IMG/VR virus record: IMGVR_UViG_3300027621_000003
Coordinates: 124,001-188,000 of that record
DNA: 64,000 bases
Strand: one strand, 5' to 3'
Positions 6,612 to 20,980 of the stretch are shown here, piece after piece. Position 1 is the first letter of the stretch. Every line of letters begins with the position of its first letter. The notes under the pieces are model-generated. The model did not search any database. It had not been told where the DNA came from and saw only the letters and a program-made list of their open reading frames with translations. The position numbers and the translations under genes are program-made.

Positions 6612-6688
6612 TGGTGGACCCTGTAGGGCTTGAACCTACGACCTACTGATTATGAGTCAGCCGCTCTGACCAACTGAGCTAAGGGTCC
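6612..6688 (-). tRNA. tRNA-Ile2 (CAU, lysidine type)
   Basis: GGACCCT...CTGACTCATAATCAG...GGGTCCACCA; Ile2-type body, encoded CCA. Confidence 0.8.
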
Positions 6689-6717
6689 ATTGTTATACAA
6701 AGATAATAAAAAAATTC

Positions 6718-7140
6718 TTAATCCCACCAATGTTCAATTTTTTGTTCAAGAATTTTAAATAATAAACGTTTAGCTTTATTGTGCTTATCTGTTACCATTT
6801 TAAGAGCTTCAGATGACCGTTTATCTAACTCATAAAACCCATCATAATATGATTCATTTTGTATTTTATCAATTAACCTAACACAAGTCATCATTAACTC
6901 AGCATCACGTTCAGAACTTTCATGAGAACCATATTTAACAAGATGTTTGGCTTGTTTTTCTAACTTGAATTTTAATACCTGAAAAACATAATGGTGGTCC
7001 CAATCCCTATCTTTCCATATTATCCAAAACCATTTATATAGGTTCTGAACTCCATACTTAATGTATTTGTGTTGGTTGGGTAGTTCCCATCTTACCCATC
7101 TGTAAAGTTTCCAATACCATTCGTTATATTCTGTGTTCAT
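6718..7140 (-). CDS. hypothetical phage protein (Trp-rich, DRDWD motif)
   Basis: 140-aa ORF inside tRNA operon 1. Confidence 0.6.
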   Translation of the reverse strand: MNTEYNEWYWKLYRWVRWELPNQHKYIKYGVQNLYKWFWIIWKDRDWDHHYVFQVLKFKLEKQAKHLVKYGSHESSERDAELMMTCVRLIDKIQNESYYDGFYELDKRSSEALKMVTDKHNKAKRLLFKILEQKIEHWWD

Positions 7141-7154
7141 AGTTATGATTTTAG

Positions 7155-7228
7155 TAGACGAGAAGGGACTTGAACCCCCAACCTTGATGATATAAGCATC
7201 CTGCTCTAACCTGTTGAGCTACCCGTCC
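7155..7228 (-). tRNA. tRNA-Ile (UAU)
   Basis: Cloverleaf; anticodon arm GATG-CTTATAT-CATC. Confidence 0.85.
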
Positions 7229-7233
7229 AAATA

Positions 7234-7419
7234 TTAGTTGAAATGAGTACAATCCCCTTGAGTATTATCCCACGGGCATATGTACATTTCTGGTTGGGTA
7301 TGTATGTAAACTCCATCAACACCAAAGTTGTCATTTTCACCATACAACCCAAGTGACTGACTTAATTCTGTCAATTCGGTTAAAAAATCTTCCTGCGTCA
7401 TTTGAGTCTTGGGGTCCAT
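7234..7419 (-). CDS. hypothetical protein
   Basis: 61-aa ORF between tRNAs. Confidence 0.45.
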   Translation of the reverse strand: MDPKTQMTQEDFLTELTELSQSLGLYGENDNFGVDGVYIHTQPEMYICPWDNTQGDCTHFN

Positions 7420-7432
7420 GATTATTGTGTTT

Positions 7433-7509
7433 TGGAGCCTGAAGACGGACTCGAACCGCCAACCCCCTGATTACAAGTCAGGTGCTCTACCAATTAAAGC
7501 TATTCAGGC
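7433..7509 (-). tRNA. tRNA-Thr (UGU)
   Basis: CCTGA-CTTGTAA-TCAGG; CCA encoded. Confidence 0.9.
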
Positions 7510-7528
7510 ATTTATGTTTTAATATATA

Positions 7529-7816
7529 TTACTTTCCTTGTTTTTTGTAAACATAAGTGATGGTATCACCAATGTTGTACTTCCTCAAAGAAGTAAACTC
7601 ACTGCTGTCTGACATGAAATACTTGTACTTCCTGTCAAGTTCAATTGTGCTGTGAGGTGGCAATTGAACCATTGAATCAATAACGAACTTTTCAACTACA
7701 TCACCTTTTTCAATCAAAGGTTTCTGTTTACAAGCTCCTAACATAGTGGCAAGAATAATAGATAAAATAATCCATAAGGAAAAATAAAGTCGGGGGTCTT
7801 TTAATATGTTTTTCAT
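7529..7816 (-). CDS. putative membrane/lipoprotein
   Basis: TM followed by LGAC; start placed after TACCTTTG promoter. Confidence 0.55.
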   Translation of the reverse strand: MKNILKDPRLYFSLWIILSIILATMLGACKQKPLIEKGDVVEKFVIDSMVQLPPHSTIELDRKYKYFMSDSSEFTSLRKYNIGDTITYVYKKQGK

Positions 7817-7817
7817 G

Positions 7818-8369
7818 TTACAAAGGTAATATATTTTTTTCAAAGTTTTTTACATAATTGTCAACTATGTGTTGAATTTCATTTTGATATCTACTATGAA
7901 CATACTGATGATGTGTTGGACATAATGGTACCAAGTTTTTTGGTTCGTTATTTTGGTGATTATTGTCATAATGATGGATAGTCACAATTTTATTTTCACT
8001 ACAAATAATACATTCTTTTTTGTGATAATTAAAACCAATTCTTCTATAACCGTTACGTTCTTGACTATCACCAAAATTTCCCCAATTTGGGTTATTTTCA
8101 CCACTTCTAAAAAAGGTGTTTGAACAAGAATAAGAACATGTTGTTCTTTCTTCTTTCCCTCCAACTTTTGTTTCAAATTGAATATCACAAACAGGACACA
8201 ATTTAATAACTGATTGGTATTTTATTTCTCGACTTCTTAAATGCGAAACGTCAATTTTATTTTCAACAATGAAATTTTCAAATTTTTTTCGAGTTTTTCC
8301 ATTGTCAAAACCATAGAGTTTTTTAATAGCTTCAGCCCTTGTCTTAGAATTTTTAATTATTTCTACCAT
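7818..8369 (-). CDS. HNH homing endonuclease
   Basis: CPVC/CSYSC zinc motifs and CIIC...IHHYD.NH.NN..NL..LCPTHH. Confidence 0.8.
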   Translation of the reverse strand: MVEIIKNSKTRAEAIKKLYGFDNGKTRKKFENFIVENKIDVSHLRSREIKYQSVIKLCPVCDIQFETKVGGKEERTTCSYSCSNTFFRSGENNPNWGNFGDSQERNGYRRIGFNYHKKECIICSENKIVTIHHYDNNHQNNEPKNLVPLCPTHHQYVHSRYQNEIQHIVDNYVKNFEKNILPL

Positions 8370-8431
8370 ATATAATAAATATATTGATTGTCGTTAAAAT
8401 TAGATTTGGTCAAATATTTTTTTAACGATTG

Positions 8432-8507
8432 TAGCGTAGACTGGATTCGAACCAGCGTGCCTCTGCTCCCAAAGCAGATGAGATAAACCTGACTCCTCTA
8501 CTACGCT
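8432..8507 (-). tRNA. tRNA-Pro (UGG)
   Basis: TCTGC-TTTGGGA-GCAGA. Confidence 0.85.
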
Positions 8508-8516
8508 ATTTGTTTG

Positions 8517-8586
8517 TGGACACTGTGGGAATCGAACCCATACGTTCTGATTGCAAATCAAACGGTCTGCCGTTGACATCAGGCCC
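8517..8586 (-). tRNA. tRNA-Ala (UGC), atypical
   Basis: TTTGA-TTTGCAA-TCAGA with G3:U70; irregular acceptor and D arms. Confidence 0.65.
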
Positions 8587-8597
8587 TTTTATTTTTG

Positions 8598-8669
8598 CGG
8601 TCCCACCGGGAATCGAACCCGGCACTTTGCCGTGACAGGGCAATATTATAGCCGATTAACTACAGGACC
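8598..8669 (-). tRNA. tRNA-Asp (GUC)
   Basis: TTGCC-CTGTCAC-GGCAA. Confidence 0.9.
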
Positions 8670-8737
8670 GTAAGTTAGTAAACCCGGGCCCAACAAGCCG
8701 TGATAAACACGGAAGGGCCCTTTTTAAGATTTACTTT

Positions 8738-8813
8738 TGGAGCGAGAGACCAGGTTCGAACTGGCGACCCTCAGTTTGGTAAACTGATGCTCTACCGACT
8801 GAGCTACTCTCGC
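8738..8813 (-). tRNA. tRNA-Gly (ACC)
   Basis: GCGAGAG acceptor, U73, CCA; anticodon arm TCAGT-TTACCAA-ACTGA. Confidence 0.85.
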
Positions 8814-8818
8814 TTTTG

Positions 8819-8890
8819 AGCGAGTGGGGAGAATCGAACTCCCATATCCAGCTTGGAAGGCTGGAGTAATAGCCTTTATACTACACTCGC
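8819..8890 (-). tRNA. tRNA-Gly (UCC)
   Basis: CCAGC-CTTCCAA-GCTGG. Confidence 0.9.
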
Positions 8891-8982
8891 TTTTTTCGAG
8901 TCAGAGTAGTCACGGCCACCTCTTATCCTTCTGACTCTTGATGTAAAAGTGGCCAATGTGGCACGACCCAAGTTACATCCAT

Positions 8983-9056
8983 TGGTTGCGGACCCGAGAC
9001 TCGAACTCGGAACTATGGGTTATGAGCCCATTATGTTACCATTACACCAACCCGCG
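8983..9056 (-). tRNA. initiator tRNA-fMet (CAU)
   Basis: C1:A72 mismatch, three G-C pairs in anticodon stem, CCA. Confidence 0.9.
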
Positions 9057-9065
9057 ATTTATTTG

Positions 9066-9137
9066 TACTCGGTAGGGGAGTCGAACCCCTCTTTCCAGGA
9101 TGAAAACCTGGCATCCTAACCGATAGATGAACCGAGC
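9066..9137 (-). tRNA. tRNA-Glu (UUC)
   Basis: CCAGG-TTTTCAT-CCTGG. Confidence 0.9.
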
Positions 9138-9150
9138 AATTATTTTTTTC

Positions 9151-9171
9151 TTACCAATACGTCAAAGAACT
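9151..9171 (-). promoter_or_regulatory. boxA-like antitermination element
   Basis: AGTTCTTTGACGTATTGGTAA, identical to 16088..16108, directly upstream of the first tRNA. Confidence 0.7.
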
Positions 9172-9242
9172 TTTTTGTTCTGTTGTCTTATTCAACAACA
9201 ATACAAAGTTAATACATTTTTTTAATACTACCAAACAAACAC

Positions 9243-9274
9243 AAAAAAAACCCATCCTTTCGAGATGGGTTTTT
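9243..9274 (-). terminator. attenuator terminator of tRNA operon 1
   Basis: AAAAACCCATC-TCGAAAG-GATGGGTTTTTTTT. Confidence 0.8.
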
Positions 9275-9295
9275 GTAAGATATTTTTTTACAATA

Positions 9296-9364
9296 TTATC
9301 CCATCTCCACTTTGGAAGTATCAGCCTCTGTTGCTGGTGTGCCGAATATGAATATGGTTTTCAT
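9296..9364 (-). CDS. leader peptide of tRNA operon 1 (22 aa, MKTIFIFGTPATEADTSKVEMG)
   Basis: Hand-translated; last codons GAGATGGG are complementary to the terminator 5' arm. Confidence 0.7.
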   Translation of the reverse strand: MKTIFIFGTPATEADTSKVEMG

Positions 9365-9421
9365 TGAATGTATTATTATTTGATTTCTTATTAAATATAA
9401 TAAACTTTTAAAAAGTGTCAA

Positions 9422-10690
9422 TTAAAACGCCAAAGAATTTACATAACTTACCGATTTTTGTACAGACTTTTCAATTGTTTTAATAATTGAGTCCAAATTT
9501 AACTCGGCAACATTACCAATTGAGATTCTAAACCATCCTTTGTTACTCTTTGAACCAAAATATTCAAACGGAACAATTCCCAACCCACAGGTATTAATTA
9601 AGAACGAAATATACTCTTCTGTGGATGAAAATGAATGAACATAACCCAAGTAAACCGAAATATAAATTCCACCATCAGGTTTTTGGTAATCAACATTATG
9701 ACCTTTGTTTTTCAATTCTTCCAACTTGTCACAGATTTTATCTGATATAAATTCATACGATTTTGTTACATAGTTTATGTGAGAAATGTAATCTTCATAA
9801 TCTACTCTGATGTACGCATCCAATGCTCGTTGTTCAGGTTTTGGTGCCCATGCTCCAATGTGAGACAAAACTTCGGTTATCTTTCCAATAATATCTTTTG
9901 GACCAAACAACCAACCAACACGAACACCAGTTGCGTTTAATGATTTTGAAATACCATCAGCACAAATCAAATAATCTCTGATTTCAGGACATAAAGTTAA
10001 TGGGTGGATAAACAAACCTTCTTTGGTGATGTCAGAATAAATCTGGTCAAAGAACAAATACAATGGTCTTGAACCTACTTGTGTTGACCTGATTTTATTT
10101 TCTCTCACAATCAACTCACAAATACCTTTCAGAACTTCGGGGTCAATTACACGACCTGTTGGATTTTGTGGCGAACAAATGCAAACCAATGATGTTTTAT
10201 CACTTATTCTACCGTCAACATCTTCAACGGTTGGAAAAAATGAATTTTCAGGTGTACATTCAATTTCTTCTTTTTGTGCATTATGTAAAAAACAATAGTG
10301 GTTATTATTCCAAGATGGTACAGGATAAATCACCTCTTCATTCGGATTTACCGTGGCTTTATAAACCGTATAAATCAATGGACGAACTCCACCACCAATT
10401 AAGATTTCTTCAGGTGAATAATCAACATTGAACTGATGTTTAATGTGTTTGGAAACAGATTCCCTTAATTCAAGTTCTCCTTGTGAGTTTGGATAGTTGG
10501 TTAAATCCCACTCGTAAGCATCTTGAATGTGTTTTCTTAATTTTGAGGGTATTGGCCATAGTTTGGAATTAAAGTCACCTATGGTTAGGTTAGATACTGG
10601 TTTTGTTTTAGCAATTTCTTTGATTTGTTGTGAGATTTTAATAATTTCAGAGCCAACAATATTGTTCCCTACATTTGATAATTTTTCCAT
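9422..10690 (-). CDS. class I/II PLP-dependent (aspartate-type) aminotransferase
   Basis: SPQNPTG, DQIY, GISKSLNATGVRVGW (PLP lysine) and WFRIS motifs. Confidence 0.9.
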   Translation of the reverse strand: MEKLSNVGNNIVGSEIIKISQQIKEIAKTKPVSNLTIGDFNSKLWPIPSKLRKHIQDAYEWDLTNYPNSQGELELRESVSKHIKHQFNVDYSPEEILIGGGVRPLIYTVYKATVNPNEEVIYPVPSWNNNHYCFLHNAQKEEIECTPENSFFPTVEDVDGRISDKTSLVCICSPQNPTGRVIDPEVLKGICELIVRENKIRSTQVGSRPLYLFFDQIYSDITKEGLFIHPLTLCPEIRDYLICADGISKSLNATGVRVGWLFGPKDIIGKITEVLSHIGAWAPKPEQRALDAYIRVDYEDYISHINYVTKSYEFISDKICDKLEELKNKGHNVDYQKPDGGIYISVYLGYVHSFSSTEEYISFLINTCGLGIVPFEYFGSKSNKGWFRISIGNVAELNLDSIIKTIEKSVQKSVSYVNSLAF

Positions 10691-10718
10691 TATCAAAAGT
10701 ATAAGACACTAATAAGAA

Positions 10719-12278
10719 TTATTCAAATATTTTACTATAAAATTTGTCAAAGTTTGGTCCTTTAACCAAACCACTTTTTCCTTGTCTGGCACTAATACCT
10801 GCCATATTTGACGCCGAAAAGAAACTACTATATTGACCAGGACCACTTCTTCTACCTATTTGAGTTAAAAATTCGTTCTTATTACCGACCTTACCTTCAG
10901 GAATGTTTTTAAGATATTCCATAAATGCTTTGGTTAACGCACCTTTACCTGTGAAGGTGTATTTTGACCTGGTATAAGTCTTAGACTTTGTTGGTGGATA
11001 CCTATCTAACAAGAATTCATCTTCACTAAGTTCTTTGTATATTGTATAATAAAATTCTTTATACAAATTATCTAATAAATTACTAGTTCTTCTTAAAACG
11101 TGTTCAGGGTCACTCTGTCTATCCTCATCCAATATTAAAGTTTTAGTATAGGTTGATTTTTTAACAATATTTTGGTCCGTATTATATGGTATTATCTCAG
11201 CGTCAAATCTAACGATGTGTTTTCCTATCATTACTTGAGTATTATAAACCTTAAAATAACAATCAATAACGCCATCTTCACTATAAGAAGTTTTTCCTTC
11301 TTTATCAATTTCTACAACCTCCCAAGGCGTACTAATTCTAATACTCGTATTATCTCTATCACTATCTTCAACGCTTGGTCTTCCAATATAAAACTTTAAT
11401 TTCCCACCTTTGAATTGGTATATCTCATTGTGGCTTGTAGTAACTTTTGGTATTATTTTATAAATAACATCCAAGACATCTTCTTTAGGGAATGATGTTT
11501 TATAGTCATTAACCATTGAATTATACGCATCTTTTGGCATATGAGCCAATACTGATTCTTTTTCTCTTGATGTCAATCTTTCGTCAGTTGAATCGTACCA
11601 AATTGAATCTGAATCAAATTTTCCATTCTTTGGTGCGTGAATGGCCATTTTGTAAAATTTATTATCCCTGTCAACATTTTTTAATATTAAATAATACAAG
11701 TTTCCATTTGAACTATATTGATTGAAATACGATGGATTACCTTTCATTGTTGTACACCATCTTGTACCTGAACCATAATAACAAGATGCGGTAAATGATT
11801 TTGGTTTTATAACCAACAACGTATCGTTTTCAAAAATTTTATCTATTTCTTTCTTGGCTAATTTTTCTGTCTGTTTGGTCTCAACGTCAGTTTTAATCTT
11901 TTGAGCTTCATTGAAAAAATCTTGTATATTTGTACTGTATTGTCTAAACTCAGGATATTTGAATTTTGATTTGTGTTTTTCAAATGTATCTAAAGAAGCA
12001 ACAATCTTGTCAATTTCACTCCTCATTCTAAATATTAGAGTTCTTGCTCTGTCTTTGTCTAAAGGCTCAGCTTCACCTGAATAATAATTTACGGTATAAT
12101 AATAATCCAAAATATCATTAAGATATTTGTAATTAGTCTCTTTTATAAAAGGTTCACCAATTAAAAAATCATACGCAGACGCATCATCCATGTAAGTGGA
12201 TATCATCTTTCTTTCACCATCAATACTTTTTTGGAATTTCTTAAATGAGTCTTCCTTACGACCTTCAAATAAAATCAT
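10719..12278 (-). CDS. ASCYYGSGTRWCT-domain protein, paralog 2
   Basis: 519 aa; shares the domain and the LFEGRKEDS N-terminus with 625..2418. Confidence 0.6.
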   Translation of the reverse strand: MILFEGRKEDSFKKFQKSIDGERKMISTYMDDASAYDFLIGEPFIKETNYKYLNDILDYYYTVNYYSGEAEPLDKDRARTLIFRMRSEIDKIVASLDTFEKHKSKFKYPEFRQYSTNIQDFFNEAQKIKTDVETKQTEKLAKKEIDKIFENDTLLVIKPKSFTASCYYGSGTRWCTTMKGNPSYFNQYSSNGNLYYLILKNVDRDNKFYKMAIHAPKNGKFDSDSIWYDSTDERLTSREKESVLAHMPKDAYNSMVNDYKTSFPKEDVLDVIYKIIPKVTTSHNEIYQFKGGKLKFYIGRPSVEDSDRDNTSIRISTPWEVVEIDKEGKTSYSEDGVIDCYFKVYNTQVMIGKHIVRFDAEIIPYNTDQNIVKKSTYTKTLILDEDRQSDPEHVLRRTSNLLDNLYKEFYYTIYKELSEDEFLLDRYPPTKSKTYTRSKYTFTGKGALTKAFMEYLKNIPEGKVGNKNEFLTQIGRRSGPGQYSSFFSASNMAGISARQGKSGLVKGPNFDKFYSKIFE

Positions 12279-12307
12279 ATATATAAATACTCACAATTAT
12301 GTATTTG

Positions 12308-12381
12308 TAGCGAGGGAGGGAATTGAACCCCCCACCTCAGGGTTATGAATCCTGCGCTCTAACCGACTGAGCTACCTCGCC
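12308..12381 (-). tRNA. elongator tRNA-Met (CAU)
   Basis: GGCGAGG...CAGGATTCATAACCCTG. Confidence 0.85.
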
Positions 12382-12385
12382 ATGA

Positions 12386-12997
12386 TTATTCTATGGTTTC
12401 ACCATCCAATGTATAAATCATACATGAGGATGATTTCCCTGAATTATCCAAACAATCTTCAATTTCTAATGGTTGTCCTTTAAAAAAGACTTGACCGATA
12501 AAATCATAATCACCTTCTGGTGTTCCTATTGAACCTGATGAGTACGTAAAATCTGTCGGAGTTGGTACTGTGTCAGACTCAAGTGAAAATTTAAACATTC
12601 CACCTTTGTTTTCATCAATACTCAAATAGACATTTGTTGGTCCTTCTTTTTGAGGAAACGCATTATACTCTCTGTACTCATACTTTTCTTCAAAATCTTC
12701 AATTGTTTCGTATAAGTCGGCGGTTTCATCAATACCAAACTCTAATACTTTATTTTCTTCTTCATCAAGAAGTTCAAAGTGCATTGTACCATTGTCAAAC
12801 GCTTCGGTTTTGTGAAAGATTTCACCGTCCCAAAAATCAAGGTCCAAAAGTTCATCTAAATCAAAACGGATTTCATGAAGTTCAGAAAAACCTTCCTCTT
12901 CCATTTTATCTTTAATAATTTGTATTTGTTCGTCAGTTAGAGATTTGCAGACTGCCTCAAAAGACCATCCATAAGTGTTAAGTGTGTATTTAGCCAT
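12386..12997 (-). CDS. hypothetical acidic protein
   Basis: 203-aa ORF with TATATTTG promoter. Confidence 0.6.
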   Translation of the reverse strand: MAKYTLNTYGWSFEAVCKSLTDEQIQIIKDKMEEEGFSELHEIRFDLDELLDLDFWDGEIFHKTEAFDNGTMHFELLDEEENKVLEFGIDETADLYETIEDFEEKYEYREYNAFPQKEGPTNVYLSIDENKGGMFKFSLESDTVPTPTDFTYSSGSIGTPEGDYDFIGQVFFKGQPLEIEDCLDNSGKSSSCMIYTLDGETIE

Positions 12998-13032
12998 ACG
13001 GCAAATATAAATTATAAACCGTGATTCGTCAA

Positions 13033-13470
13033 TTATTTTAAGAATCTTAATTTGTATAATGTTGAGTAAATCAATTCTTGAACTCCATCAATTTGATTTT
13101 GAATATAAGATTCTTTAACCGATGTCCTATTTTTTTCAATATTTTCATCTAATTCTTTAAAATAAGCTATTACTTGTTCTGTTGATTTGTAATCAACTGT
13201 TTTAATTGTTTTATAACCAGTAATTATTTCGTATTTTCCTTGATAACTTTCAACAATATTATCAACTAACCCATCAATTCCATCATAATATTCTTGTAAA
13301 GCTTTATGTTCAGAAAATGATGATTGTGATTTTGTCTGCCAATGAAAGATATGTACTTGAGACTGTGAATGTAATAATGTTGCAATCATATCAACCACAT
13401 CGGCAGTTTCAGTTGCAGGATTTGATTTTGATGATAAACCATTTAAAAGGTCTCTTTTTGTAATTTCCAT
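13033..13470 (-). CDS. ferritin/Dps-like four-helix protein
   Basis: HIFHW...EHKALQEYYD...VD..VE pattern. Confidence 0.6.
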   Translation of the reverse strand: MEITKRDLLNGLSSKSNPATETADVVDMIATLLHSQSQVHIFHWQTKSQSSFSEHKALQEYYDGIDGLVDNIVESYQGKYEIITGYKTIKTVDYKSTEQVIAYFKELDENIEKNRTSVKESYIQNQIDGVQELIYSTLYKLRFLK

Positions 13471-13491
13471 ATCAATAAATATACTGATGTG

Positions 13492-14175
13492 TTAATATGT
13501 CTTAAACTTCATTTCTTTGATAACACAATTTCCAATTTTTTTATGTCCTGATGGTGCCATATGACAAAGTCCATCCCAACAATCCGATTTTGTAATCACA
13601 CGAGTATTAATCACTTTTCCACCAACAATTTTTTTTATCAATTCATTCTGAAATTTGGAATACTTAACTCTGTAGTTTGGATTTTCTGGTGTGTTGATGC
13701 AAATTAATGGGTCAAATCCGGTAATTACAACTGGTTTAACACCTTTGGAATTACAAATGTTTACAATTTTTTGAATGTTCTTTACTGCGCTTTCAATGGT
13801 GATTTTGCTGTTATACATATCATTGGCACCTCCATAGATAAAACAATAATCTAAACCATTGTGAATAGATTCTTTTGCTCTTTCTAACATCCAACCTGTG
13901 GTTTTTCCACCAACAGATATGTTATTCATTCTCATTTTTGTTTTGTTGGATAGAGTATATTGCCAACCATTAGGATTTGATGTGTGAGAATCACCAATAA
14001 AAAGAACGTATTTTCCTTTTACATCCACAATTGTGTCTTGTGGTTTAATTTTTACCGTATCAATTTTAACGGTATCTTCAATTTGTTTATTGTTACCCCA
14101 AACTTTCCAACTTGTTATGAATCCTAAAATTGCTATAACAATGACCAAAATAATTGCTTTTACTAAATTTTTCAT
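13492..14175 (-). CDS. SGNH/GDSL hydrolase, membrane-anchored
   Basis: IGDSHT, GG.TT, YGGAND and DGLCH blocks. Confidence 0.85.
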   Translation of the reverse strand: MKNLVKAIILVIVIAILGFITSWKVWGNNKQIEDTVKIDTVKIKPQDTIVDVKGKYVLFIGDSHTSNPNGWQYTLSNKTKMRMNNISVGGKTTGWMLERAKESIHNGLDYCFIYGGANDMYNSKITIESAVKNIQKIVNICNSKGVKPVVITGFDPLICINTPENPNYRVKYSKFQNELIKKIVGGKVINTRVITKSDCWDGLCHMAPSGHKKIGNCVIKEMKFKTY

Positions 14176-14281
14176 ATTTTTTATTAAAAAACACTCTCAA
14201 GCTCTCTACTCCCAGTTCCGAGGAATTGTATCTTACTTAGCCCGTCTCACCACTGTGTGGGTACTTGAGTTTATGTTTTTG

Positions 14282-14359
14282 TAGTCAGGACAGGATTCGA
14301 ACCTGTAACACCGGTTTGACCACTTACGTGGTTGCGTCTATCCATTCCGCCACCTGACT
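14282..14359 (-). ncRNA. tRNA-like RNA (Leu-type body, no canonical anticodon loop)
   Basis: AGTCAGG/CCTGACT acceptor, GGCGGAATGG..AGACGC D arm, TTCGAAT T loop; anticodon arm ACCAC-GTAA-GTGGT. Confidence 0.7.
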
Positions 14360-14436
14360 ATAGTTGTCAGTCTCTCCTGACCGTCACCCCCACTCCGAAG
14401 GTATGAGCCTTCATATGTGATGCTGGGTTAGCTTTG

Positions 14437-14510
14437 TGGTGTGAACGGGAATCGAACCACGTGGCACGTAGGGTTTCAATCTACTGCTCTACCTGCTGAG
14501 CTACCACACC
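14437..14510 (-). tRNA. tRNA-Phe (GAA), second copy
   Basis: GTAGA-TTGAAAC-CCTAC; slightly irregular T stem. Confidence 0.75.
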
Positions 14511-14537
14511 ATTATTGTTATACAAAGTTAAAATATA

Positions 14538-15014
14538 TTATCCAATTTTCCAAGCTCCAATTATGTGTTTTTTTATTTTTTTACCGTCCTCAGGGTTACC
14601 AATAACAACACCATCTTTAATGGTAAATGCGTGACCTTTAACAACCACCATGTAAGAACCAACAGGATATTTTTTAATGAACGAAAATGTTGTTGTTGCT
14701 CTTAATTTTTTAACACCTTTAACTACAACATAATACAACATGGTATTGTGTTCCTCAGAAATAATTTGAACGTCTTTACCGTTAATTTGTTTACCATTCT
14801 TTGATAACAAATTCATGCCAGTACCAAGTAAAAAAGTACCTTTACCATTTTTTCTCTTGAAAGTTTCTTTAACAAATTGGTGGGCGGAATCATAGTCCAT
14901 ATCCGCGGCTGATGCAATTGCCCTAACAACACAATCGTTTTTTTCAGATTTGGCAATTTTTGATTCAGTATATCCTTTGATTGCGTTTGAAGATGATATA
15001 AACCCCTTTTCCAT
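14538..15014 (-). CDS. hypothetical phage protein (NDCVVRA...GHAF motif, possible Cys/His dyad)
   Basis: Start moved to MEKG after TATATTTG promoter. Confidence 0.55.
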   Translation of the reverse strand: MEKGFISSSNAIKGYTESKIAKSEKNDCVVRAIASAADMDYDSAHQFVKETFKRKNGKGTFLLGTGMNLLSKNGKQINGKDVQIISEEHNTMLYYVVVKGVKKLRATTTFSFIKKYPVGSYMVVVKGHAFTIKDGVVIGNPEDGKKIKKHIIGAWKIG

Positions 15015-15060
15015 ACTACAAATATACAACAGGTATTTGACATTACAAAAAAATATTTTG

Positions 15061-15133
15061 CTCCCCGGATAGGATTTGAACCTATGACCTATCGCTTAAC
15101 AGGCGAGTGCTCTAACCACTGAGCTACCGAGGA
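15061..15133 (-). tRNA. tRNA-Asn (GUU)
   Basis: TCGC-CTGTTAA-GCGA. Confidence 0.9.
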
Positions 15134-15139
15134 ATGTTG

Positions 15140-15221
15140 TACCAAAGGTGGGAGTCGAACCCACACGTCTTTAAGACATTAGTTTCTAAGACTAATGCGG
15201 CTACCGTTACGCCACTTTGGT
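15140..15221 (-). tRNA. tRNA-Leu (UAG)
   Basis: TTAGT-CTTAGAA-ACTAA, long variable arm. Confidence 0.9.
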
Positions 15222-15227
15222 ATTTTG

Positions 15228-15298
15228 CGCAAGTGGAAGGACTCGAACCCTCGCCAAAAGTTTTGGAGACCTTTATGCTACCATTACACCACACTTAC
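15228..15298 (-). tRNA. tRNA-Trp (CCA)
   Basis: AAGGT-CTCCAAA-ACTTT, G73. Confidence 0.9.
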
Positions 15299-15305
15299 GT
15301 ATTTG

Positions 15306-15380
15306 TGATTCCTGAGGGACTCGAACCCCCACATCTTCTCGTCCGTAGCGAGATGTTTTATCCAATTAAACTAAGGAACC
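15306..15380 (-). tRNA. tRNA-Arg (ACG)
   Basis: TCTCG-CTACGGA-CGAGA. Confidence 0.9.
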
Positions 15381-15383
15381 ATT

Positions 15384-15458
15384 TGGGGTGACTGATGGGA
15401 TTCGAACCCACGACACTCGGCACCACAAGCCGATGCTCTACCACTGAACTACAGTCAC
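15384..15458 (-). tRNA. tRNA-His (GUG)
   Basis: TCGGC-TTGTGGT-GCCGA, C73, CCA; G-1 not encoded. Confidence 0.9.
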
Positions 15459-15460
15459 AG

Positions 15461-15534
15461 AGTCCATAGTTGGAATCGAACCAACGAATAACAGTTTTGC
15501 AGACTGTCCCTTTGAACCGCTCAGGCATATGGAC
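15461..15534 (-). tRNA. tRNA-Cys (GCA)
   Basis: ACAGT-CTGCAAA-ACTGT, U73. Confidence 0.9.
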
Positions 15535-15542
15535 TTATATTC

Positions 15543-15589
15543 TATAATCCTCCAAATCTAGTAAAAAAAGTGAGTTTTGGAGGATTATA
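15543..15589. repeat. 14-bp inverted repeat hairpin in tRNA spacer
   Basis: tataatcctccaaa ... tttggaggattata. Confidence 0.7.
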
Positions 15590-15596
15590 AGTTTTG

Positions 15597-15678
15597 TGCC
15601 AGCAGTAGGACTCGAACCTACGAACTCAAATGAGAGCGGGTTTACAATCCGCCGCAATTGCCGCTATGCGATACTGGC
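15597..15678 (-). tRNA. tRNA-Tyr (GUA)
   Basis: GCGGA-TTGTAAA-CCCGC, long variable arm. Confidence 0.9.
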
Positions 15679-15685
15679 ATTTTTG

Positions 15686-15758
15686 TCTTTCCTGTTGGAT
15701 TTGAACCAACGACATCTTGGATGTAAGCCAAGTGCTCTTCCAACTGAGCTAAGGAAAG
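15686..15758 (-). tRNA. tRNA-Val (UAC)
   Basis: CTTGG-CTTACAT-CCAAG. Confidence 0.9.
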
Positions 15759-15764
15759 ATATTG

Positions 15765-15838
15765 TGACCCCATCGGGACTCGAACCCGAAACCCCCGTGT
15801 TAAAAGCACGGTGCTCTAGCCAATTGAGCTATAAGGTC
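15765..15838 (-). tRNA. tRNA-Lys (UUU)
   Basis: CCGTG-CTTTTAA-CACGG. Confidence 0.9.
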
Positions 15839-15844
15839 ATATTG

Positions 15845-15915
15845 TTACCCCTGAAGGATTCGAACCTCCACTAAGTGGACCAAAACCACTCGTCCTGCCG
15901 TTAGACGAAAGGGTA
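15845..15915 (-). tRNA. tRNA-Gln (UUG)
   Basis: AGTGG-TTTTGGT-CCACT. Confidence 0.9.
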
Positions 15916-15920
15916 ATTTA

Positions 15921-15997
15921 TGGTTGGTGATACAGGACTTGAACCTGTGACCCCTACGGTATCAGCGTAGTGCTCTAACCAACTGAGCTAATCACCA
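15921..15997 (-). tRNA. tRNA-Ile (GAU)
   Basis: CTACG-CTGATAC-CGTAG, CCA. Confidence 0.9.
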
Positions 15998-16006
15998 ATG
16001 TATTTG

Positions 16007-16079
16007 TGGGGTAGACAGGTATCGAACCTGTTCCTTCGGATTTTCAGTCCGGCGCAATGACCTCATCTGCCACTACCCC
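16007..16079 (-). tRNA. tRNA-Phe (GAA)
   Basis: CGGA-CTGAAAA-TCCG. Confidence 0.85.
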
Positions 16080-16087
16080 ATTTTTGG

Positions 16088-16108
16088 TTACCAATACGTC
16101 AAAGAACT
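16088..16108 (-). promoter_or_regulatory. boxA-like antitermination element
   Basis: Identical 21-mer to 9151..9171. Confidence 0.7.
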
Positions 16109-16109
16109 T

Positions 16110-16146
16110 AAAAACAAAAAAACCCGAACCTTGTGAGTTCGGGTTT
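16110..16146 (-). terminator. attenuator terminator of tRNA operon 2
   Basis: AAACCCGAAC-TCACAAG-GTTCGGGTTTTTTTGTTTTT. Confidence 0.8.
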
Positions 16147-16167
16147 CCTTTTTTAGGCTACTACGTG

Positions 16168-16263
16168 TTAACTTATAACACCCGAACTTGAAAATACGCG
16201 AAGATACCAATTCTGACAGAATTGAATGACATGTTTCACGATTTGTTTATTTACGAGTTTCAT
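16168..16263 (-). CDS. leader peptide of tRNA operon 2 (31 aa, MKLVNKQIVKHVIQFCQNWYLRVFSSSGVIS)
   Basis: Hand-translated; downstream of TATCTTTG promoter; 3' end carries AGTTCGGGT, complementary to the terminator 5' arm. Confidence 0.8.
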   Translation of the reverse strand: MKLVNKQIVKHVIQFCQNWYLRVFSSSGVIS

Positions 16264-16312
16264 TGTGTTTAGTATTAAATATGGTACAAAGATACAAAAG
16301 TTTCTTGATATG

Positions 16313-16573
16313 TTAAATATTTTTTTCGTTTTTATTTTTTAATAACCAGTTGGCTCCGACTACAAACCCTTGTTTCCATTTTGTAATATCATCATCACAC
16401 ATCCCTTCACTGTATTGTTGATATTTGTCATCAGCGCCAATATGAATCATTTGTTGGATTCTTTTTTCTATAAAACCGGGCTTAGTTTCAAACTCAGGTT
16501 CTCCCAATTCAACCATACCATTTTTCCACTTTTTCCAAGTGTCAAAATCTTTTAAATCTTCAATGTTAATCAT
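16313..16573 (-). CDS. hypothetical protein
   Basis: 86-aa ORF. Confidence 0.5.
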   Translation of the reverse strand: MINIEDLKDFDTWKKWKNGMVELGEPEFETKPGFIEKRIQQMIHIGADDKYQQYSEGMCDDDITKWKQGFVVGANWLLKNKNEKNI

Positions 16574-16586
16574 ATTATTTTTTTAA

Positions 16587-17003
16587 TTATAACCTGTCTT
16601 TTACAATATTCAATAAGTCCTCATTAAAAGGTACTCCATGTCTTGAATCAAATTCATCTTCCAATCTTTCAGTTGACATATCATTTTTCTTCAATAAAAT
16701 ATACGCTCCCAAATCAGCTTCAATTTCATCTTTTTCAGACCTCGGTCCGTTGTGTCCCAATAACAAATGTGAGATTTCATGAGCTTCAATAAATTTCATG
16801 TCATCCATAGTTAAACCATCATCACCCAAAAATATTTCACCGTCAATAAAAATTGTTTTGAATTCTGGTGCAAGAAATCCATAACCGTATTGGTCAAAAA
16901 TTTTTCTCATTGCACTATAATTTGGATTTTCTTTGAATACCAAATTAATATTCATGTTTGGGATAAAACTACTTTTGTACGCTATGATGTCTTGGTCTTC
17001 CAT
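16587..17003 (-). CDS. HExxH metallopeptidase-like (ImmA/IrrE-like)
   Basis: AHEISHLLLGH...EIEAD. Confidence 0.65.
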   Translation of the reverse strand: MEDQDIIAYKSSFIPNMNINLVFKENPNYSAMRKIFDQYGYGFLAPEFKTIFIDGEIFLGDDGLTMDDMKFIEAHEISHLLLGHNGPRSEKDEIEADLGAYILLKKNDMSTERLEDEFDSRHGVPFNEDLLNIVKDRL

Positions 17004-17005
17004 TT

Positions 17006-17569
17006 TTATAATAAATATTCCAATACTTTTTCTTTTATGCCCGTTTGTTTAATGCCTTCTTTATTTTCGGGTGTTAATACAAAGTTCTTCAATCCCCAAG
17101 TCTTATCGTGCACATCCGTTAATGACATATTCAAATCATCAATTGCCACCCAATGTGTGATTACAGGATTCTGACCAATATATTGCGCAATCTCCAAACT
17201 ACGAGTTTGTTCTAACTCCGATTTGTTGTGCCATGGGAAATCATCATAATCATCATATAAGATAGAATCGGTAAAGGCAATTGGTTTTTTAATAATACCT
17301 TTTGATTCGTAATATTCTCCCATCTCCTCAACTGTCGCCCAATTTTTCCAATCTGAAGATACAACAATTTCGGCACCTGTTTCCTCTAAGATTTCATTAA
17401 GAACTTTAACCGCCTCCTCATCAAAATTATCAAAACGATACTCAACGGGCATACTTAAAGTACTCATAGACAATTTACGTTTACCCCAACTTTTTTGTTT
17501 TTTGAAACGATTACCCCAATTATCAGACAGACATATCACACCATCGTGGTCCAAAAATATAACTTTCAT
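17006..17569 (-). CDS. HAD-superfamily phosphatase (Swiss-army-knife RNA-repair type)
   Basis: MKVIFLDHDGV, IVVSSDW and WVAIDD motifs. Confidence 0.8.
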   Translation of the reverse strand: MKVIFLDHDGVICLSDNWGNRFKKQKSWGKRKLSMSTLSMPVEYRFDNFDEEAVKVLNEILEETGAEIVVSSDWKNWATVEEMGEYYESKGIIKKPIAFTDSILYDDYDDFPWHNKSELEQTRSLEIAQYIGQNPVITHWVAIDDLNMSLTDVHDKTWGLKNFVLTPENKEGIKQTGIKEKVLEYLL

Positions 17570-17677
17570 AACACAAAGATAATAAAAGTTATTCTTGTAT
17601 CAAAGAAATATCGTAATAAAAACTATTGTATCATATTTTACAATTTGACAAATATGTTGTATTTTTTTTAAAAAACT

Positions 17678-18394
17678 ATGTCATATTTAAATACACCAAT
17701 TCCCGTAGTAGAGGCTTACATTAGAGGAAACTTCTTAAGAAACCAAGAAGATTCTCACGATAAAAAATTCCCTTGTTACATTTTTGGAATGTCGTCAATT
17801 CCAGCACAAGCACCATTATTTCACTTTATCATGGAGGATGGGGCATTATGGTGGAGAATGCCAATACAGGCATTTTGTTGGAAAGAAGATGCACCTGAAC
17901 AAGAACTTGATGAATTAGTGTTATGGGATTCATTTTCATATCATGTTGGAGCAACAGCATTCCCTATGTTAAAAAACAAGACATGTAAATTCATATCAAG
18001 ACGTAGAGTAGAATATACGGGCAAATATTTATTTACCTTAGATTGGGGGTCATCTTCAGACATGGGAGACACAGATTTTGGATTAAGTGAATTCCCATCA
18101 CAACACAAATGTGGTCATTTCATTGCCATGGATAATGGAAACTTTGCAATACAACCAAACAATAGGTTTGTGCTTCATGACCCATCGTTCACAGTAAAAG
18201 ATGAATTGGTTATACATAGAAAATACAATACCACATTATGGACTGCTGAAAGAAATGGAAGATGGGTCACACCTGATACTGACATTATGAATTACGACCA
18301 TACCGATTTAGAAAAAGGTGAGAGTAATAAAAAACGGTCAGATGAATATAATAAAATTGATTCCGAACGTTTAAAGAATGAAGGTTCAATTTAA
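17678..18394 (+). CDS. hypothetical phage protein
   Basis: 238 aa; HKCGH..MDNGNFAIQPNNR motif. Confidence 0.65.
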   Translation: MSYLNTPIPVVEAYIRGNFLRNQEDSHDKKFPCYIFGMSSIPAQAPLFHFIMEDGALWWRMPIQAFCWKEDAPEQELDELVLWDSFSYHVGATAFPMLKNKTCKFISRRRVEYTGKYLFTLDWGSSSDMGDTDFGLSEFPSQHKCGHFIAMDNGNFAIQPNNRFVLHDPSFTVKDELVIHRKYNTTLWTAERNGRWVTPDTDIMNYDHTDLEKGESNKKRSDEYNKIDSERLKNEGSI

Positions 18395-19007
18395 CCACCA
18401 AAATGGATTCTTTTTAGACGGGAGAATATTTTGTGAAGTTTACGGTATTGCGGAAAACGAATCAAATGATGAGTTATTAAATTCAGGATGGTTACCGTCA
18501 ATGGAGGAAAAAAATATTTGGTATCAATCAAGAAGTCATAGAATAGAACTATCTAATTTTGAGATATCAAAAAAACGAAGACACATAATTAAAAAGTTAA
18601 CCTGTGAAGTAAGTGATTATATTCAAAACCAAGAAATAGATGATTTCTTTCAAGAATACTACAATGATAAGGATTTTGATATTATGGATGATTATAATAA
18701 CTGTTCAAAGTTTTTTGAACCAAAAATATTGTACTTAAGATTAGAAGGTAAATTAGTTGCGGTGGGAAGATACTTAGAAAATAAAAAGTCTAATGTATTT
18801 TTAAATCTTGCTTATGATAACAATAATTTAAAGTTATCTCTTGGTACTAATTTATTTTACATACTCGCAGATATTACCAAGAAACAAAATAAAGATTATT
18901 TGTATATCTATGAATCATATGATGATAGTTTTTCATATAAACAAAAATTACCTAACTTAAATTTTTGGAGTGGGACTAAATGGATATCAAATGCTATTTA
19001 TAAATAA
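18378..19007 (+). CDS. aminoacyl-tRNA-protein transferase-like (Bpt/ATE family, GNAT fold)
   Basis: LNSGW, WYQSRSHRI, LVAVG, Y...KLSLGT, YLYIY and YKQ patterns. Confidence 0.55.
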   Translation: MKVQFNHQNGFFLDGRIFCEVYGIAENESNDELLNSGWLPSMEEKNIWYQSRSHRIELSNFEISKKRRHIIKKLTCEVSDYIQNQEIDDFFQEYYNDKDFDIMDDYNNCSKFFEPKILYLRLEGKLVAVGRYLENKKSNVFLNLAYDNNNLKLSLGTNLFYILADITKKQNKDYLYIYESYDDSFSYKQKLPNLNFWSGTKWISNAIYK

Positions 19008-19009
19008 AA

Positions 19010-20403: not shown

Positions 20404-20414
20404 AGTAATAAATA

Positions 20415-20768
20415 TCAATCATCTACTTTGAGGTCCAATGTTCTTAACATCCACATTGGTTTCTTTTCAGCTTGTAAAGCATCTATCCAATCTTTTGCCG
20501 TTGGAATATAATTAAAACAATCTTCTTTCACGTGTTGTTCACCAACATACCTGGTGTAGACAGTTTTACCGTCACTATTAACAAATGATTTACCAAAGAT
20601 TTTTTCCATCTCAAAGATACCTTCTGAGTGGTGACGAAACATTCTATGATTTGAATGTCCAACCCACGCCTTTGTTTCATCTAACCAATCGTGTAAATGA
20701 ATATAATCTTCAAATTTTCCACCAAATTTTTTGGCTGAAGATTTTGCATGAATTAAAGGATGTGCCAT
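20415..20768 (-). CDS. His-rich hypothetical protein (DUF6915-like)
   Basis: MAHPLIHAKSSAKKFGG...HRMFRHH..G...EQHVKED. Confidence 0.65.
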   Translation of the reverse strand: MAHPLIHAKSSAKKFGGKFEDYIHLHDWLDETKAWVGHSNHRMFRHHSEGIFEMEKIFGKSFVNSDGKTVYTRYVGEQHVKEDCFNYIPTAKDWIDALQAEKKPMWMLRTLDLKVDD

Positions 20769-20899: not shown

Positions 20900-20903
20900 T
20901 TTG

Positions 20904-20977: not shown

Positions 20978-20980
20978 ATT

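What the first reader, a model, noticed from the sequence alone, without database searches (positions are those of the whole stretch)
8738..8813. tRNA-Gly with an ACC anticodon
This is a clean Gly tRNA (G1-C72, C2-G71, U73, CCA) with loop TTACCAA. Established: Gly-ACC genes are essentially absent from bacteria, where A34 tRNAs are mostly limited to Arg-ACG deaminated by TadA. No Gly-GCC is present in the window, and GGT looks like the commonest Gly codon here. Inference: it is tuned to phage GGU codons or evades a GCC-specific anticodon nuclease.
Basis: partly seen in the sequence, partly recalled or inferred. Interest (0 to 1): 0.68.

Follow-up and report, generated by a model that had tools for sequence, protein, structure and literature searches.

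The report
Phage glycine tRNA with "forbidden" ACC anticodon
A 295-kb freshwater jumbo phage carries a real, conserved glycine tRNA whose anticodon (ACC) reviews call universally missing from life, and the same kind of tRNA recurs in many uncultivated phages, where it replaces the usual GCC tRNA in genomes that write glycine almost only as GGU.

Summary
Window 8738-8813 (minus strand) is a canonical tRNA-Gly with anticodon ACC, loop UUACCAA and an encoded CCA. The same sequence stands in three other assemblies and in an independent run's contig, so it is not an assembly error.

The genome has no Gly-GCC gene. GGT is 60% of Gly codons and GGC 3%.

A distant relative has an orthologous Gly-GCC gene at the same array position. 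It differs by G34A plus two anticodon-stem pairs, so ACC arose from GCC inside this phage family. GGC was already almost unused in that relative.

Pattern scans found Gly-ACC genes in at least 118 viral contigs and at least 120 metagenome contigs. They found only 34 in 185,579 prokaryote species.

In phages the ACC gene replaces GCC and goes with GGC-poor coding. It also shows a recurrent change of the loop-closing 31:39 pair from C:G to a weaker pair.

Best reading: an unmodified-A34 tRNA that reads GGU by Watson-Crick pairing. The loop lacks the TadA motif UACG, and no deaminase was found in the phage. Escape from a tRNA nuclease is untested; the phage does carry tRNA-repair-type ligases. 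No tRNA-level data exist.

The parts
8738..8813 (-). tRNA-Gly(ACC) gene, 76 nt with encoded CCA. Acceptor GCGAGAG/CUCUCGC, U73; anticodon stem UCAGU/ACUGA (U31:A39); loop UUACCAA.
   Evidence: ARAGORN; Rfam 67.1 bits; sequence; cloverleaf 100% paired across 5 family members with 6 doubly changed pairs.
8778..8780 (-). Anticodon ACC (GGT on the + strand). T at 8780 is the complement of A34.
   Evidence: Sequence. Identical in L068, L074 and L075 and in the X3 contig covering 8595-8843; no variant listed at 8780 in any run.
8818..8890 (-). tRNA-Gly(UCC), 4 nt upstream of the ACC gene. Loop CUUCCAA, C31:G39. Partner that covers GGA/GGG.
   Evidence: ARAGORN; Rfam 65.1 bits. The ACC/UCC pair is kept in relatives L269, L266 and L051.
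6612..16079 (-). Main minus-strand tRNA array: 24 of the genome's 28 tRNA genes, interspersed with protein genes. Purine-34 tRNAs for four-codon boxes are only Gly-ACC and Arg-ACG; the other four-codon boxes have U34 tRNAs.
   Evidence: ARAGORN; Rfam.
15305..15380 (-). tRNA-Arg(ACG), loop CUACGGA. It carries the TadA core motif UACG and serves as the internal contrast to the Gly loop UUACCAA.
   Evidence: Sequence; TadA consensus from PMC11472039.
9422..10696 (-). Class I/II aminotransferase gene beside the array. Used as the marker to fetch graded relatives of the phage.
   Evidence: Pfam PF00155, E=2.4e-38; homologues at 98-67% identity; loci L266-L273.

Best explanation
This is a functional phage tRNA-Gly whose wobble base is a genomically encoded A that most likely stays unmodified. 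The host GlyRS charges it: all known Gly identity elements are present and N34 is not one of them. It reads GGU by a Watson-Crick A34:U pair. The neighbouring tRNA-Gly(UCC) reads GGA and GGG. GGC, only 3% of Gly codons, is left to weak A:C reading or to host tRNA. The gene arose from an ordinary phage Gly-GCC gene by G34A within this jumbo-phage family, which probably infects Bacteroidota. The change happened after the family's coding had already almost dropped GGC, as part of a genome-wide GpC depletion. It came with a remodelled anticodon stem, notably C31:G39 to U31:A39. The same solution has evolved many times in AT-rich uncultivated phages. A phage tRNA only supplements the host set, so it can specialise on one codon; a cell cannot. 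Shown here: the gene is real, conserved and structurally constrained; it has a GCC orthologue; the association with codon usage; the 31:39 covariation; the enrichment in phages. Inferred: expression, charging, absence of inosine, and the decoding pattern.
For: Gene and identity elements. Independent assemblies and reads.

Family history: L269 (aminotransferase 91% identical) and L266 (80%) keep Gly-ACC next to Gly-UCC. L272 (67%) has Gly-GCC at the syntenic place, Glu-Thr-Met-Gly(UCC)-Gly(GCC)-Asp. The L272 GCC tRNA has the same acceptor, D and T arms as the L269 ACC tRNA. It differs at G34A and at pairs 29:41 and 31:39. The cloverleaf is 100% paired, with 6 pairs changed on both sides.

Codon usage: GGT 60%, GGC 3%. 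All relatives, including the GCC one, have GGT far above GGC, for example 122:3 in L272. GpC rho is 0.63 and every NGC codon is rare. Across viral loci the ACC-bearing set has median GGT/(GGT+GGC) 0.88 against 0.64 for the GCC-bearing set (p=1.4e-8). The excess over other NNT/NNC codons is logit 0.91 against -0.01 (p=8e-6).

Replacement of GCC: Gly-GCC co-occurs with ACC in 1 of 118 viral loci, Gly-UCC in 27.

No inosine expected: the loop is UUACCAA, whereas the TadA consensus is UACG/YUACGAA, or UAMG in S. pyogenes (PMC11472039). In E. coli an ACC-anticodon tRNA showed no inosine and read U3:C3 at 76:24; E. coli tRNA-Gly(ACC) in vitro read GGU strongly and GGC weakly (PMC11066159, citing Boren 1993). 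No CDA-fold deaminase was detected in the phage.

Charging: human GlyRS charges Gly-ACC, and position 34 is not sequence-specific for it (PMC4928997).

Stem remodelling: C31:G39 is the majority pair in 3 of 26 ACC scaffold clusters against 16 of 23 GCC clusters (Fisher p=3.8e-5). It is not plain AT-richness: 28:42 is more G/C-rich in ACC tRNAs, and co-resident UCC tRNAs keep a G/C pair at 31:39 in 17 of 25. The trend repeats in 64 further ACC sequences from metagenomes, with C:G in 14 of 64.
Against: There is no direct evidence of expression, aminoacylation or the modification state of A34. The RNA-run contigs did not clearly cover this tRNA, and contigs cannot show editing. The host is only inferred, from a T9SS sorting domain, and the specificity of its TadA is unknown; some bacteria have TadA with a wider substrate range. 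One relative (L270) has no second Gly tRNA at that place in its array, so the gene is dispensable for some family members. The GCC-bearing relative has the same codon bias, so codon bias permits ACC but does not force it. The codon-usage association is a correlation, and the 85% clustering only partly controls for relatedness. Molecular dynamics in PMC4928997 suggested that A34 destabilises the tRNA-Gly anticodon loop, though in a human C32/C38 context.
Confidence: 0.6

Rival explanations
1. A34 is deaminated to inosine by the host TadA, if that enzyme has relaxed specificity, or by an unrecognised phage enzyme. The tRNA would then be Gly(ICC) and read GGU, GGC and GGA.
For: Almost all genomically encoded A34 tRNAs are converted to I34 (PMC11066159). 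TadA substrate range has widened in some Firmicutes. The phage also carries Arg-ACG, which presumably relies on host TadA.
Against: The loop has C36 where every known TadA target has G36. E. coli TadA did not modify an ACC-anticodon tRNA presented in an Arg2-like loop. Even eukaryotic ADAT deaminates Gly-ACC very poorly. No deaminase domain was found in the phage. ACC-bearing phages avoid GGC specifically, although I34 would read GGC well.
Confidence: 0.15
2. The main selective driver is escape from a host or competitor tRNA-targeting defence that recognises the GCC anticodon stem-loop. G34A and the altered 30:40/31:39 pairs would make the phage tRNA a poor substrate, while decoding of GGU is retained.
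For: Phage tRNAs are known to resist anticodon nucleases through anticodon-loop changes (PMC10264068; for the paper, text read). This phage encodes an Rnl1-like ligase (64.8 bits), an adjacent AAA_33 kinase (37.2 bits) and an Rnl2-like ligase (81.2 bits), the enzyme types of T4 tRNA repair. The change touches both the anticodon and the adjacent stem pairs.
Against: My literature searches turned up no nuclease or toxin specific for tRNA-Gly(GCC) anticodon loops in phage defence. The 31:39 change goes the same way, to a weaker pair, in most independent lineages with different hosts; that looks more like a structural or decoding requirement than escape from one enzyme. The strong link to GGC-poor coding is not predicted by this idea alone. 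It is compatible with the best explanation as an added benefit.
Confidence: 0.2
3. The G34A change is a neutral or slightly harmful drift product, or a decaying gene, in an AT-rich genome and has no specific function.
For: The genome is 32% G+C. One relative lacks the gene at that place in its array. In cellular genomes most ACC copies look like fresh single-base variants of multi-copy GCC genes.
Against: ACC is kept across relatives whose marker protein has diverged to 80% identity, and stem changes are compensated. It is the only GGY-reading tRNA in the genome. It recurs in at least 26 scaffold lineages with a consistent stem signature and is far more frequent in viral contigs than in cells.
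Confidence: 0.04
4. It is a sequencing or assembly error at 8780, and the real anticodon is GCC.
For: None found.
Against: The sequence is identical in four assemblies from different samples and in a contig of a separate run. No variant at 8780 appeared in any of 4 runs. Diverged relatives also have ACC.
Confidence: 0.01

Closest known systems
Bacterial and phage tRNA-Gly(GCC), E. coli tRNA-Gly3 type
   Same: Same scaffold: G1:C72, C2:G71, G3:C70, U73, the same type of D arm, and loop U32 U33 N34 C35 C36 A37 A38. A GCC orthologue exists at the syntenic position in relative L272.
   Different: A34 instead of G34. U31:A39 instead of the C31:G39 found in 80% of phage GCC tRNAs and in the Bacteroidota GCC genes listed. 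Expected to read GGU well and GGC poorly, rather than both.
Engineered tRNA-Gly(ACC) (Boren et al. 1993, as cited in PMC11066159) and orthogonal ACC-anticodon tRNA in E. coli (PMC11066159)
   Same: Same anticodon in a bacterial translation system. These were shown to decode GGU strongly and GGC weakly, without inosine.
   Different: Those were laboratory constructs made because no natural example was known. This one is natural, conserved and has a co-adapted anticodon stem.
Natural unmodified-A34 tRNAs: Mycoplasma tRNA-Thr(AGU), yeast mitochondrial tRNA-Arg(ACG)
   Same: A genomically encoded A34 that is not converted to inosine, in a four-codon box (PMC11066159).
   Different: Those occur in minimal tRNA sets, where one tRNA must read the whole box. 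Here the tRNA supplements a full host set and sits beside a UCC partner, so it looks like a single-codon specialist.
tRNA-Arg(ACG) and TadA, the canonical bacterial A34 tRNA
   Same: A34 and C35; the phage itself encodes one, with loop CUACGGA.
   Different: The Gly loop has C36, outside the UACG core that TadA needs.
Phage tRNAs that resist anticodon nucleases (T5-type, PMC10264068)
   Same: A phage tRNA array with an altered anticodon stem-loop relative to the host-type tRNA.
   Different: In those cases the anticodon itself is kept and neighbouring loop bases change, and a cognate nuclease is known. Here the wobble base changes and no cognate nuclease is known.

Membership tests
tRNA (Rfam RF00005) | Cloverleaf with conserved U8, A14, G18G19, G53-T54-Psi55-C56 and A58, scoring above the gathering threshold | tested here: met
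   67.1 bits against 29; ARAGORN call; conserved bases read from the sequence.
tRNA (Rfam RF00005) | Stems kept by compensatory change among homologues | tested here: met
   5 family members: 100% of cells paired, 6 pairs changed on both sides, 0 of 500 shuffles reach the covariation score. Only 5 sequences.
Bacterial tRNA-Gly identity set | G1:C72, C2:G71, G3:C70, discriminator U73, C35 and C36 (identity set from established knowledge; PMC9976931 turned up but was not read) | tested here: met
   All present in the sequence; invariant in the family alignment.
Bacterial tRNA-Gly identity set | Actually charged with glycine | not testable with these tools
   Only indirect support: human GlyRS charges Gly-ACC (PMC4928997). 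No aaRS core domain (PF00587) was found in the phage, so the host enzyme must do it.
TadA substrate (I34 tRNA) | Anticodon loop with the core U33-A34-C35-G36 (extended YUACGAA; UAMG in S. pyogenes) | tested here: not met
   The loop is UUACCAA, with C36, against the consensus in PMC11472039. The phage Arg-ACG loop CUACGGA does fit.
TadA substrate (I34 tRNA) | Inosine present at position 34 in the RNA | not testable with these tools
   The RNA runs are kept as contigs and do not clearly cover the gene.
Phage-encoded supplementary tRNA (codon compensation) | Lies in a phage tRNA array and matches a codon frequent in the phage | tested here: met
   Sits in an array of 28 tRNAs in a 295-kb virus record. 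GGT is 60% of Gly codons. Host codon usage was not tested because the host is not identified.
Nuclease-evading phage tRNA | A cognate host nuclease exists and the phage tRNA resists it | not tested
   No candidate nuclease is known. Only RNA ligase and kinase genes in the phage hint at tRNA damage.

The most novel reading that the evidence does not exclude
Uncultivated phages harbour a widespread natural class of tRNA-Gly with an unmodified A34, the one four-box anticodon that reviews list as missing from all life and 'prohibited' even in phages. It has evolved repeatedly from GCC-type, and perhaps UCC-type, scaffolds, together with a weakened 31:39 loop-closing pair that makes A34 workable in the Gly anticodon loop. 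[quoted passage not shown]
Probability: 0.45. Interest if true: 0.85.

Novelty: new variant of a known kind. Interest (0 to 1): 0.74.

Why it matters
Reviews state that tRNA-Gly(ACC) is universally missing and that phages lack the same 'prohibited' tRNA genes as bacteria (PMC8007984). Its absence from eukaryotes has been used to argue that tRNA identity space is saturated (PMC4928997).

This gene is a clean, conserved counter-example, and it is not alone. About 6% of GCC/ACC-type Gly tRNAs sampled in IMG/VR carry ACC, against roughly 1 in 5,000 in cellular genomes.

The natural GCC/ACC orthologue pair and the recurrent 31:39 change give a concrete experiment. It can test what makes A34 tolerable in a Gly anticodon loop and whether A:U Watson-Crick decoding of GGU is an advantage.

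It also bears on annotation. Gly-ACC calls in viral contigs should not be discarded as errors. A Gly-ACC gene with a remodelled stem on a MAG contig may mark phage DNA.

Tried and rejected
1. Assembly error: rejected.

2. Editing or expression evidence from metatranscriptomes. Three RNA runs were laid, but all are stored as contigs. None clearly spans 8738-8813 and no difference is listed at 8780, so this says nothing about inosine or expression.

3. Phage-encoded deaminase: PF00383 and PF14437 gave no hit. Very divergent enzymes could be missed.

4. Phage-encoded GlyRS: no class II core domain, PF00587.

5. Cultured relatives. Megablast of the tRNA region found only an 84% match of about 90 nt in a 735-kb uncultured phage. 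Megablast of six abundant ACC tRNAs from other lineages against 50,697 GenBank phage records found nothing. tblastn with the aminotransferase found nothing closer than 28%. Short queries detect only near-identical genes, so the true frequency of ACC in cultured phages remains unmeasured.

6. Literature. No paper in the library holds 'Gly ACC' together with 'phage' and 'tRNA'. The paper on phage tRNAs and anticodon nucleases does not mention Gly or position 34.

7. The idea that the ACC anticodon drove the loss of GGC in this family: rejected, because the GCC-bearing relative has the same bias and all NGC codons are rare.

8. The idea that the 31:39 shift is plain AT-richness: rejected.

9. Exact counts. 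The 6% figure rests on 7 of 120 hits in scan order.

Full report
**What is there**

The feature lies on the minus strand. ARAGORN calls window 8738-8813 tRNA-Gly with anticodon acc, and Rfam RF00005 scores it 67.1 bits against a gathering score of 29.

Read 5' to 3', it has these parts:
- acceptor stem GCGAGAG/CUCUCGC
- U8
- D arm GCUC-AGUCGGUA-GAGC
- anticodon stem UCAGU/ACUGA
- loop UUACCAA
- variable region GGGUC
- T arm GCCAG-UUCGAAC-CUGGU
- discriminator U73
- an encoded CCA

The free-energy fold alone gives a different middle, which is usual for tRNAs. The cloverleaf is backed by covariation.

All bacterial Gly identity elements are present: G1:C72, C2:G71, G3:C70, U73, C35 and C36.

**Context**

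The window is bases 124001-188000 of a 294,914-bp IMG/VR virus record that CheckV rates 98% complete. It is a 32% G+C jumbo phage.
- All 28 tRNA genes lie in the window. The only Gly tRNAs are ACC and, 4 nt upstream, UCC (8818-8890). There is no GCC gene.
- For the other four-codon boxes the phage has only U34 tRNAs (Thr, Pro, Val, Leu-CUN, Ser-UCN), plus Arg-ACG.
- The genome encodes a protein with a T9SS C-terminal sorting domain (PF18962, 55.3 bits), as does relative L269. This points to a Bacteroidota host.
- The phage is common in fresh water: 14 DNA runs from 13 studies hold 97% or more of the sampled words.

**Is the base real?**

Yes. Three other IMG/VR assemblies (L068, L074, L075) have the identical tRNA and flanks. 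A contig of run X3 covers 8595-8843 without a difference, and none of the four runs laid shows a variant at 8780.

**Origin within the family**

The aminotransferase gene beside the array (9422-10696) has homologues at graded identity on long contigs.

| Relative | Marker identity | Contig | Gly tRNAs in the array |
|---|---|---|---|
| L269 | 91% | 57 kb | Gly(UCC)-Gly(ACC)-Asp |
| L266 | 80% | 312 kb | Asn-Gly(ACC)-Gly(UCC)-Asp |
| L051 | not measured | 18-kb viral contig | ACC next to UCC |
| L270 | 68% | 208 kb | Gly(UCC) only at that place |
| L272 | 67% | 227 kb | Glu-Thr-Met-Gly(UCC)-Gly(GCC)-Asp, the syntenic position |

The L272 GCC tRNA has the same acceptor, D and T arms as the L269 ACC tRNA. 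It differs at G34A and at two anticodon-stem pairs: 29:41 (U:A to A:U) and 31:39 (C:G to U:A). Over the five tRNAs every stem position pairs, and six pairs carry changes on both sides.

So ACC is a derived, maintained state of an orthologous functional gene.

**Codon usage**

In 279 long ORFs GGT is 60%, GGA 31%, GGG 7% and GGC 3% of Gly codons, a GGT:GGC ratio of 23:1.

This is part of a general pattern. GpC (rho 0.63) and CpG (0.61) are depleted, and all NGC codons are rare: the T:C ratio is 18 for Cys, 19 for CGY and 11 for AGY.

The GCC-bearing relative L272 has the same bias, GGT 122 to GGC 3, as do L270 and L267. The loss of GGC therefore came before the anticodon change and permitted it.

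**A wider phenomenon**

I wrote a pattern for Gly-type tRNAs: GCG at the 5' end, CGCU at the 3' end, conserved D and T bases, and YUACCAN in the loop. It matches the window once and never in 100 shuffles.

| Collection | ACC-pattern matches |
|---|---|
| 185,579 prokaryote species genomes, 596 Gb | 34 |

- ARAGORN of the 153 sequences tested Gly(acc): the window's own tRNA, all 118 viral matches and 33 of the 34 from species genomes.
- With Y at the wobble complement, the same scan order gave 113 GCC and 7 ACC among the first 120 viral hits, about 6%.
- The GCC version of the pattern matches 279 of 301 Bacteroidota genomes. In cells the ACC:GCC ratio is therefore about 1:5,000.
- Five cellular genomes with ACC that I examined all also have GCC. 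In three of them the ACC copy equals a GCC paralogue except for G34A.
- Two 'bacterial' hits are identical to viral contigs.
- In the 118 viral loci Gly-GCC co-occurs with ACC once, and Gly-UCC 27 times.

**Two signatures of adaptation across lineages**

Codon usage is the first.
- ACC-bearing viral loci, dereplicated by tRNA sequence, have median GGT/(GGT+GGC) 0.88, against 0.64 for GCC-bearing loci (p=1.4e-8).
- The difference exceeds their general third-position T bias: excess logit 0.91 against -0.01, p=8e-6.

The loop-closing pair is the second.
- The 56 unique viral ACC tRNAs fall into 26 clusters at 85% body identity. They include scaffolds with GCC-type and with UCC-type D arms.
- C31:G39 is the majority pair in 3 of 26 ACC clusters against 16 of 23 GCC clusters (Fisher p=3.8e-5).
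- A G/C pair at 31:39 occurs in 27% of ACC, 93% of GCC and 73% of UCC tRNAs.
- At 28:42 the ACC tRNAs are more G/C-rich than the GCC tRNAs. UCC tRNAs in the same phages keep a G/C pair at 31:39 in 17 of 25. So this is not AT drift.
- In 64 further ACC sequences from metagenomes, C:G is 14 of 64.

**Mechanism**

The most likely state of A34 is unmodified.
- TadA needs the core UACG (E. coli, Klebsiella) or UAMG (S. pyogenes), so G36 is constant (PMC11472039). The Gly loop has C36. The phage's own Arg-ACG loop, CUACGGA, fits.
- In E. coli an ACC-anticodon tRNA in an Arg2-like loop showed no inosine and read GGU:GGC at 76:24.
- E. coli tRNA-Gly(ACC) in vitro read GGU strongly and GGC weakly (PMC11066159).
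- Eukaryotic ADAT barely deaminates Gly-ACC, while GlyRS charges it (PMC4928997).
- I found no CDA-fold deaminase and no class II synthetase core in the phage.

The specific avoidance of GGC by ACC-bearing phages also fits A34 better than I34, which pairs well with C.

Why Gly alone gets a purine-34 tRNA here is an inference from established knowledge. In well-studied bacteria U34 of tRNA-Gly(UCC) carries an xm5U-type modification that restricts it to A and G. U34 in the other four-codon boxes is xo5U-type and also reads U. This has not been checked for Bacteroidota.

**Rivals**
- Inosine formation by an unusual TadA remains possible (0.15).
- Defence evasion cannot be tested here. The phage has an Rnl1-like ligase with an adjacent AAA_33 kinase and an Rnl2-like ligase, so tRNA damage may matter to it. 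I found no nuclease known to target the Gly-GCC loop, and the uniform direction of the 31:39 change across hosts argues for a structural reason (0.2; not exclusive of the best explanation).
- Drift or a decaying gene (0.04) and assembly error (0.01) are unlikely.

**Novelty**

Ehrlich et al. 2021 list tRNA-Gly(ACC) among eight universally missing tRNA genes. [quoted passage not shown]

No paper in the library joins Gly ACC with phage. Six representative ACC tRNAs have no near-identical match in 50,697 GenBank phage records, which may be why the class has been overlooked.

I rate it a new variant of a known kind: a natural tRNA-Gly isoacceptor with an anticodon thought not to exist.

**Limits**
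- There are no tRNA-level data.
- The 6% figure rests on 7 of 120 hits.
- The clustering only partly controls for phylogeny.
- The host assignment rests on one domain.

Noticed in passing
window 7154-7228 (-): tRNA-Ile with anticodon UAU, another anticodon that PMC8007984 lists as lost in prokaryotes. It is kept in relatives L051, L068, L075, L270 and L272. ATA is 27% of Ile codons. In ACC-sampled viral loci Ile-UAU (10) outnumbers Ile-GAU (5).
   Followed up: partly
window 14281-14359 (-): tRNA-like gene that ARAGORN reports with a 2-nt 'anticodon' (ta); Rfam gives 41.2 bits. The same oddity is in L068, and a similar one (tt) in L269. It could be a tRNA with an unusual anticodon loop.
   Followed up: no
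window 8517-8586 (-): Weak tRNA-like element, 29.5 bits, just at the Rfam threshold, between tRNA-Pro and tRNA-Asp. ARAGORN does not call it.
   Followed up: no
window 8814 and 8846: A minor strain in run X3 and in RNA runs X15 and X16 has A>C at 8846. Its contigs leave the reference exactly at 8814, the 5' end of the Gly-ACC gene. One X3 contig joins 8563 to 8816 through 35 other letters. Some co-occurring relatives therefore have a different arrangement there, or lack Asp and Gly-ACC at that spot; compare L269, where 276 nt lie between UCC and ACC, and L270, which has no second Gly tRNA at that place in its array.
   Followed up: partly
whole genome G000: GpC (rho 0.63) and CpG (0.61) are both depleted, and all NGC codons are strongly avoided, with T:C ratios of 11-23. 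The cause was not studied; restriction avoidance or a base-modification context are possibilities.
   Followed up: partly
G000:C1:219128-220519 and 214547-215026 (outside the window): A T4 Rnl1-like RNA ligase (PF09511, 64.8 bits) with an adjacent AAA_33 P-loop kinase (37.2 bits), plus an Rnl2-like ligase (PF09414, 81.2 bits). This is the enzyme set of a tRNA heal-and-seal pathway.
   Followed up: partly
G000:C1:216327-216557 (outside the window); L269 16622-18520: Proteins with a Por_Secre_tail (T9SS C-terminal sorting) domain in the phage and in a relative. This is a host hint for Bacteroidota.
   Followed up: partly
window 6612-22196 and relatives: The focal phage has no tRNA-Ala, although relatives L051, L266, L269, L270 and L272 carry Ala-UGC. 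It has two Phe-GAA and three CAU (Met, or possibly Ile2) tRNAs. Array content turns over quickly within the family.
   Followed up: no
GCC-sampled viral loci L153-L265: Other A34 tRNAs occur sporadically in phage arrays: Thr-AGU 3, Ser-AGA 2, Pro-AGG 1, Leu-AAG 1 and Ser-ACU 1, out of 1095 tRNAs. Phages may explore A34 anticodons more widely than cells do.
   Followed up: no
window 8675-8725 (-): A G+C-rich hairpin (GGGCCC ... GGGCCC, with an inner CCGUG/CACGG stem) fills the spacer between Gly-ACC and tRNA-Asp. It may be a processing or termination signal.
   Followed up: no
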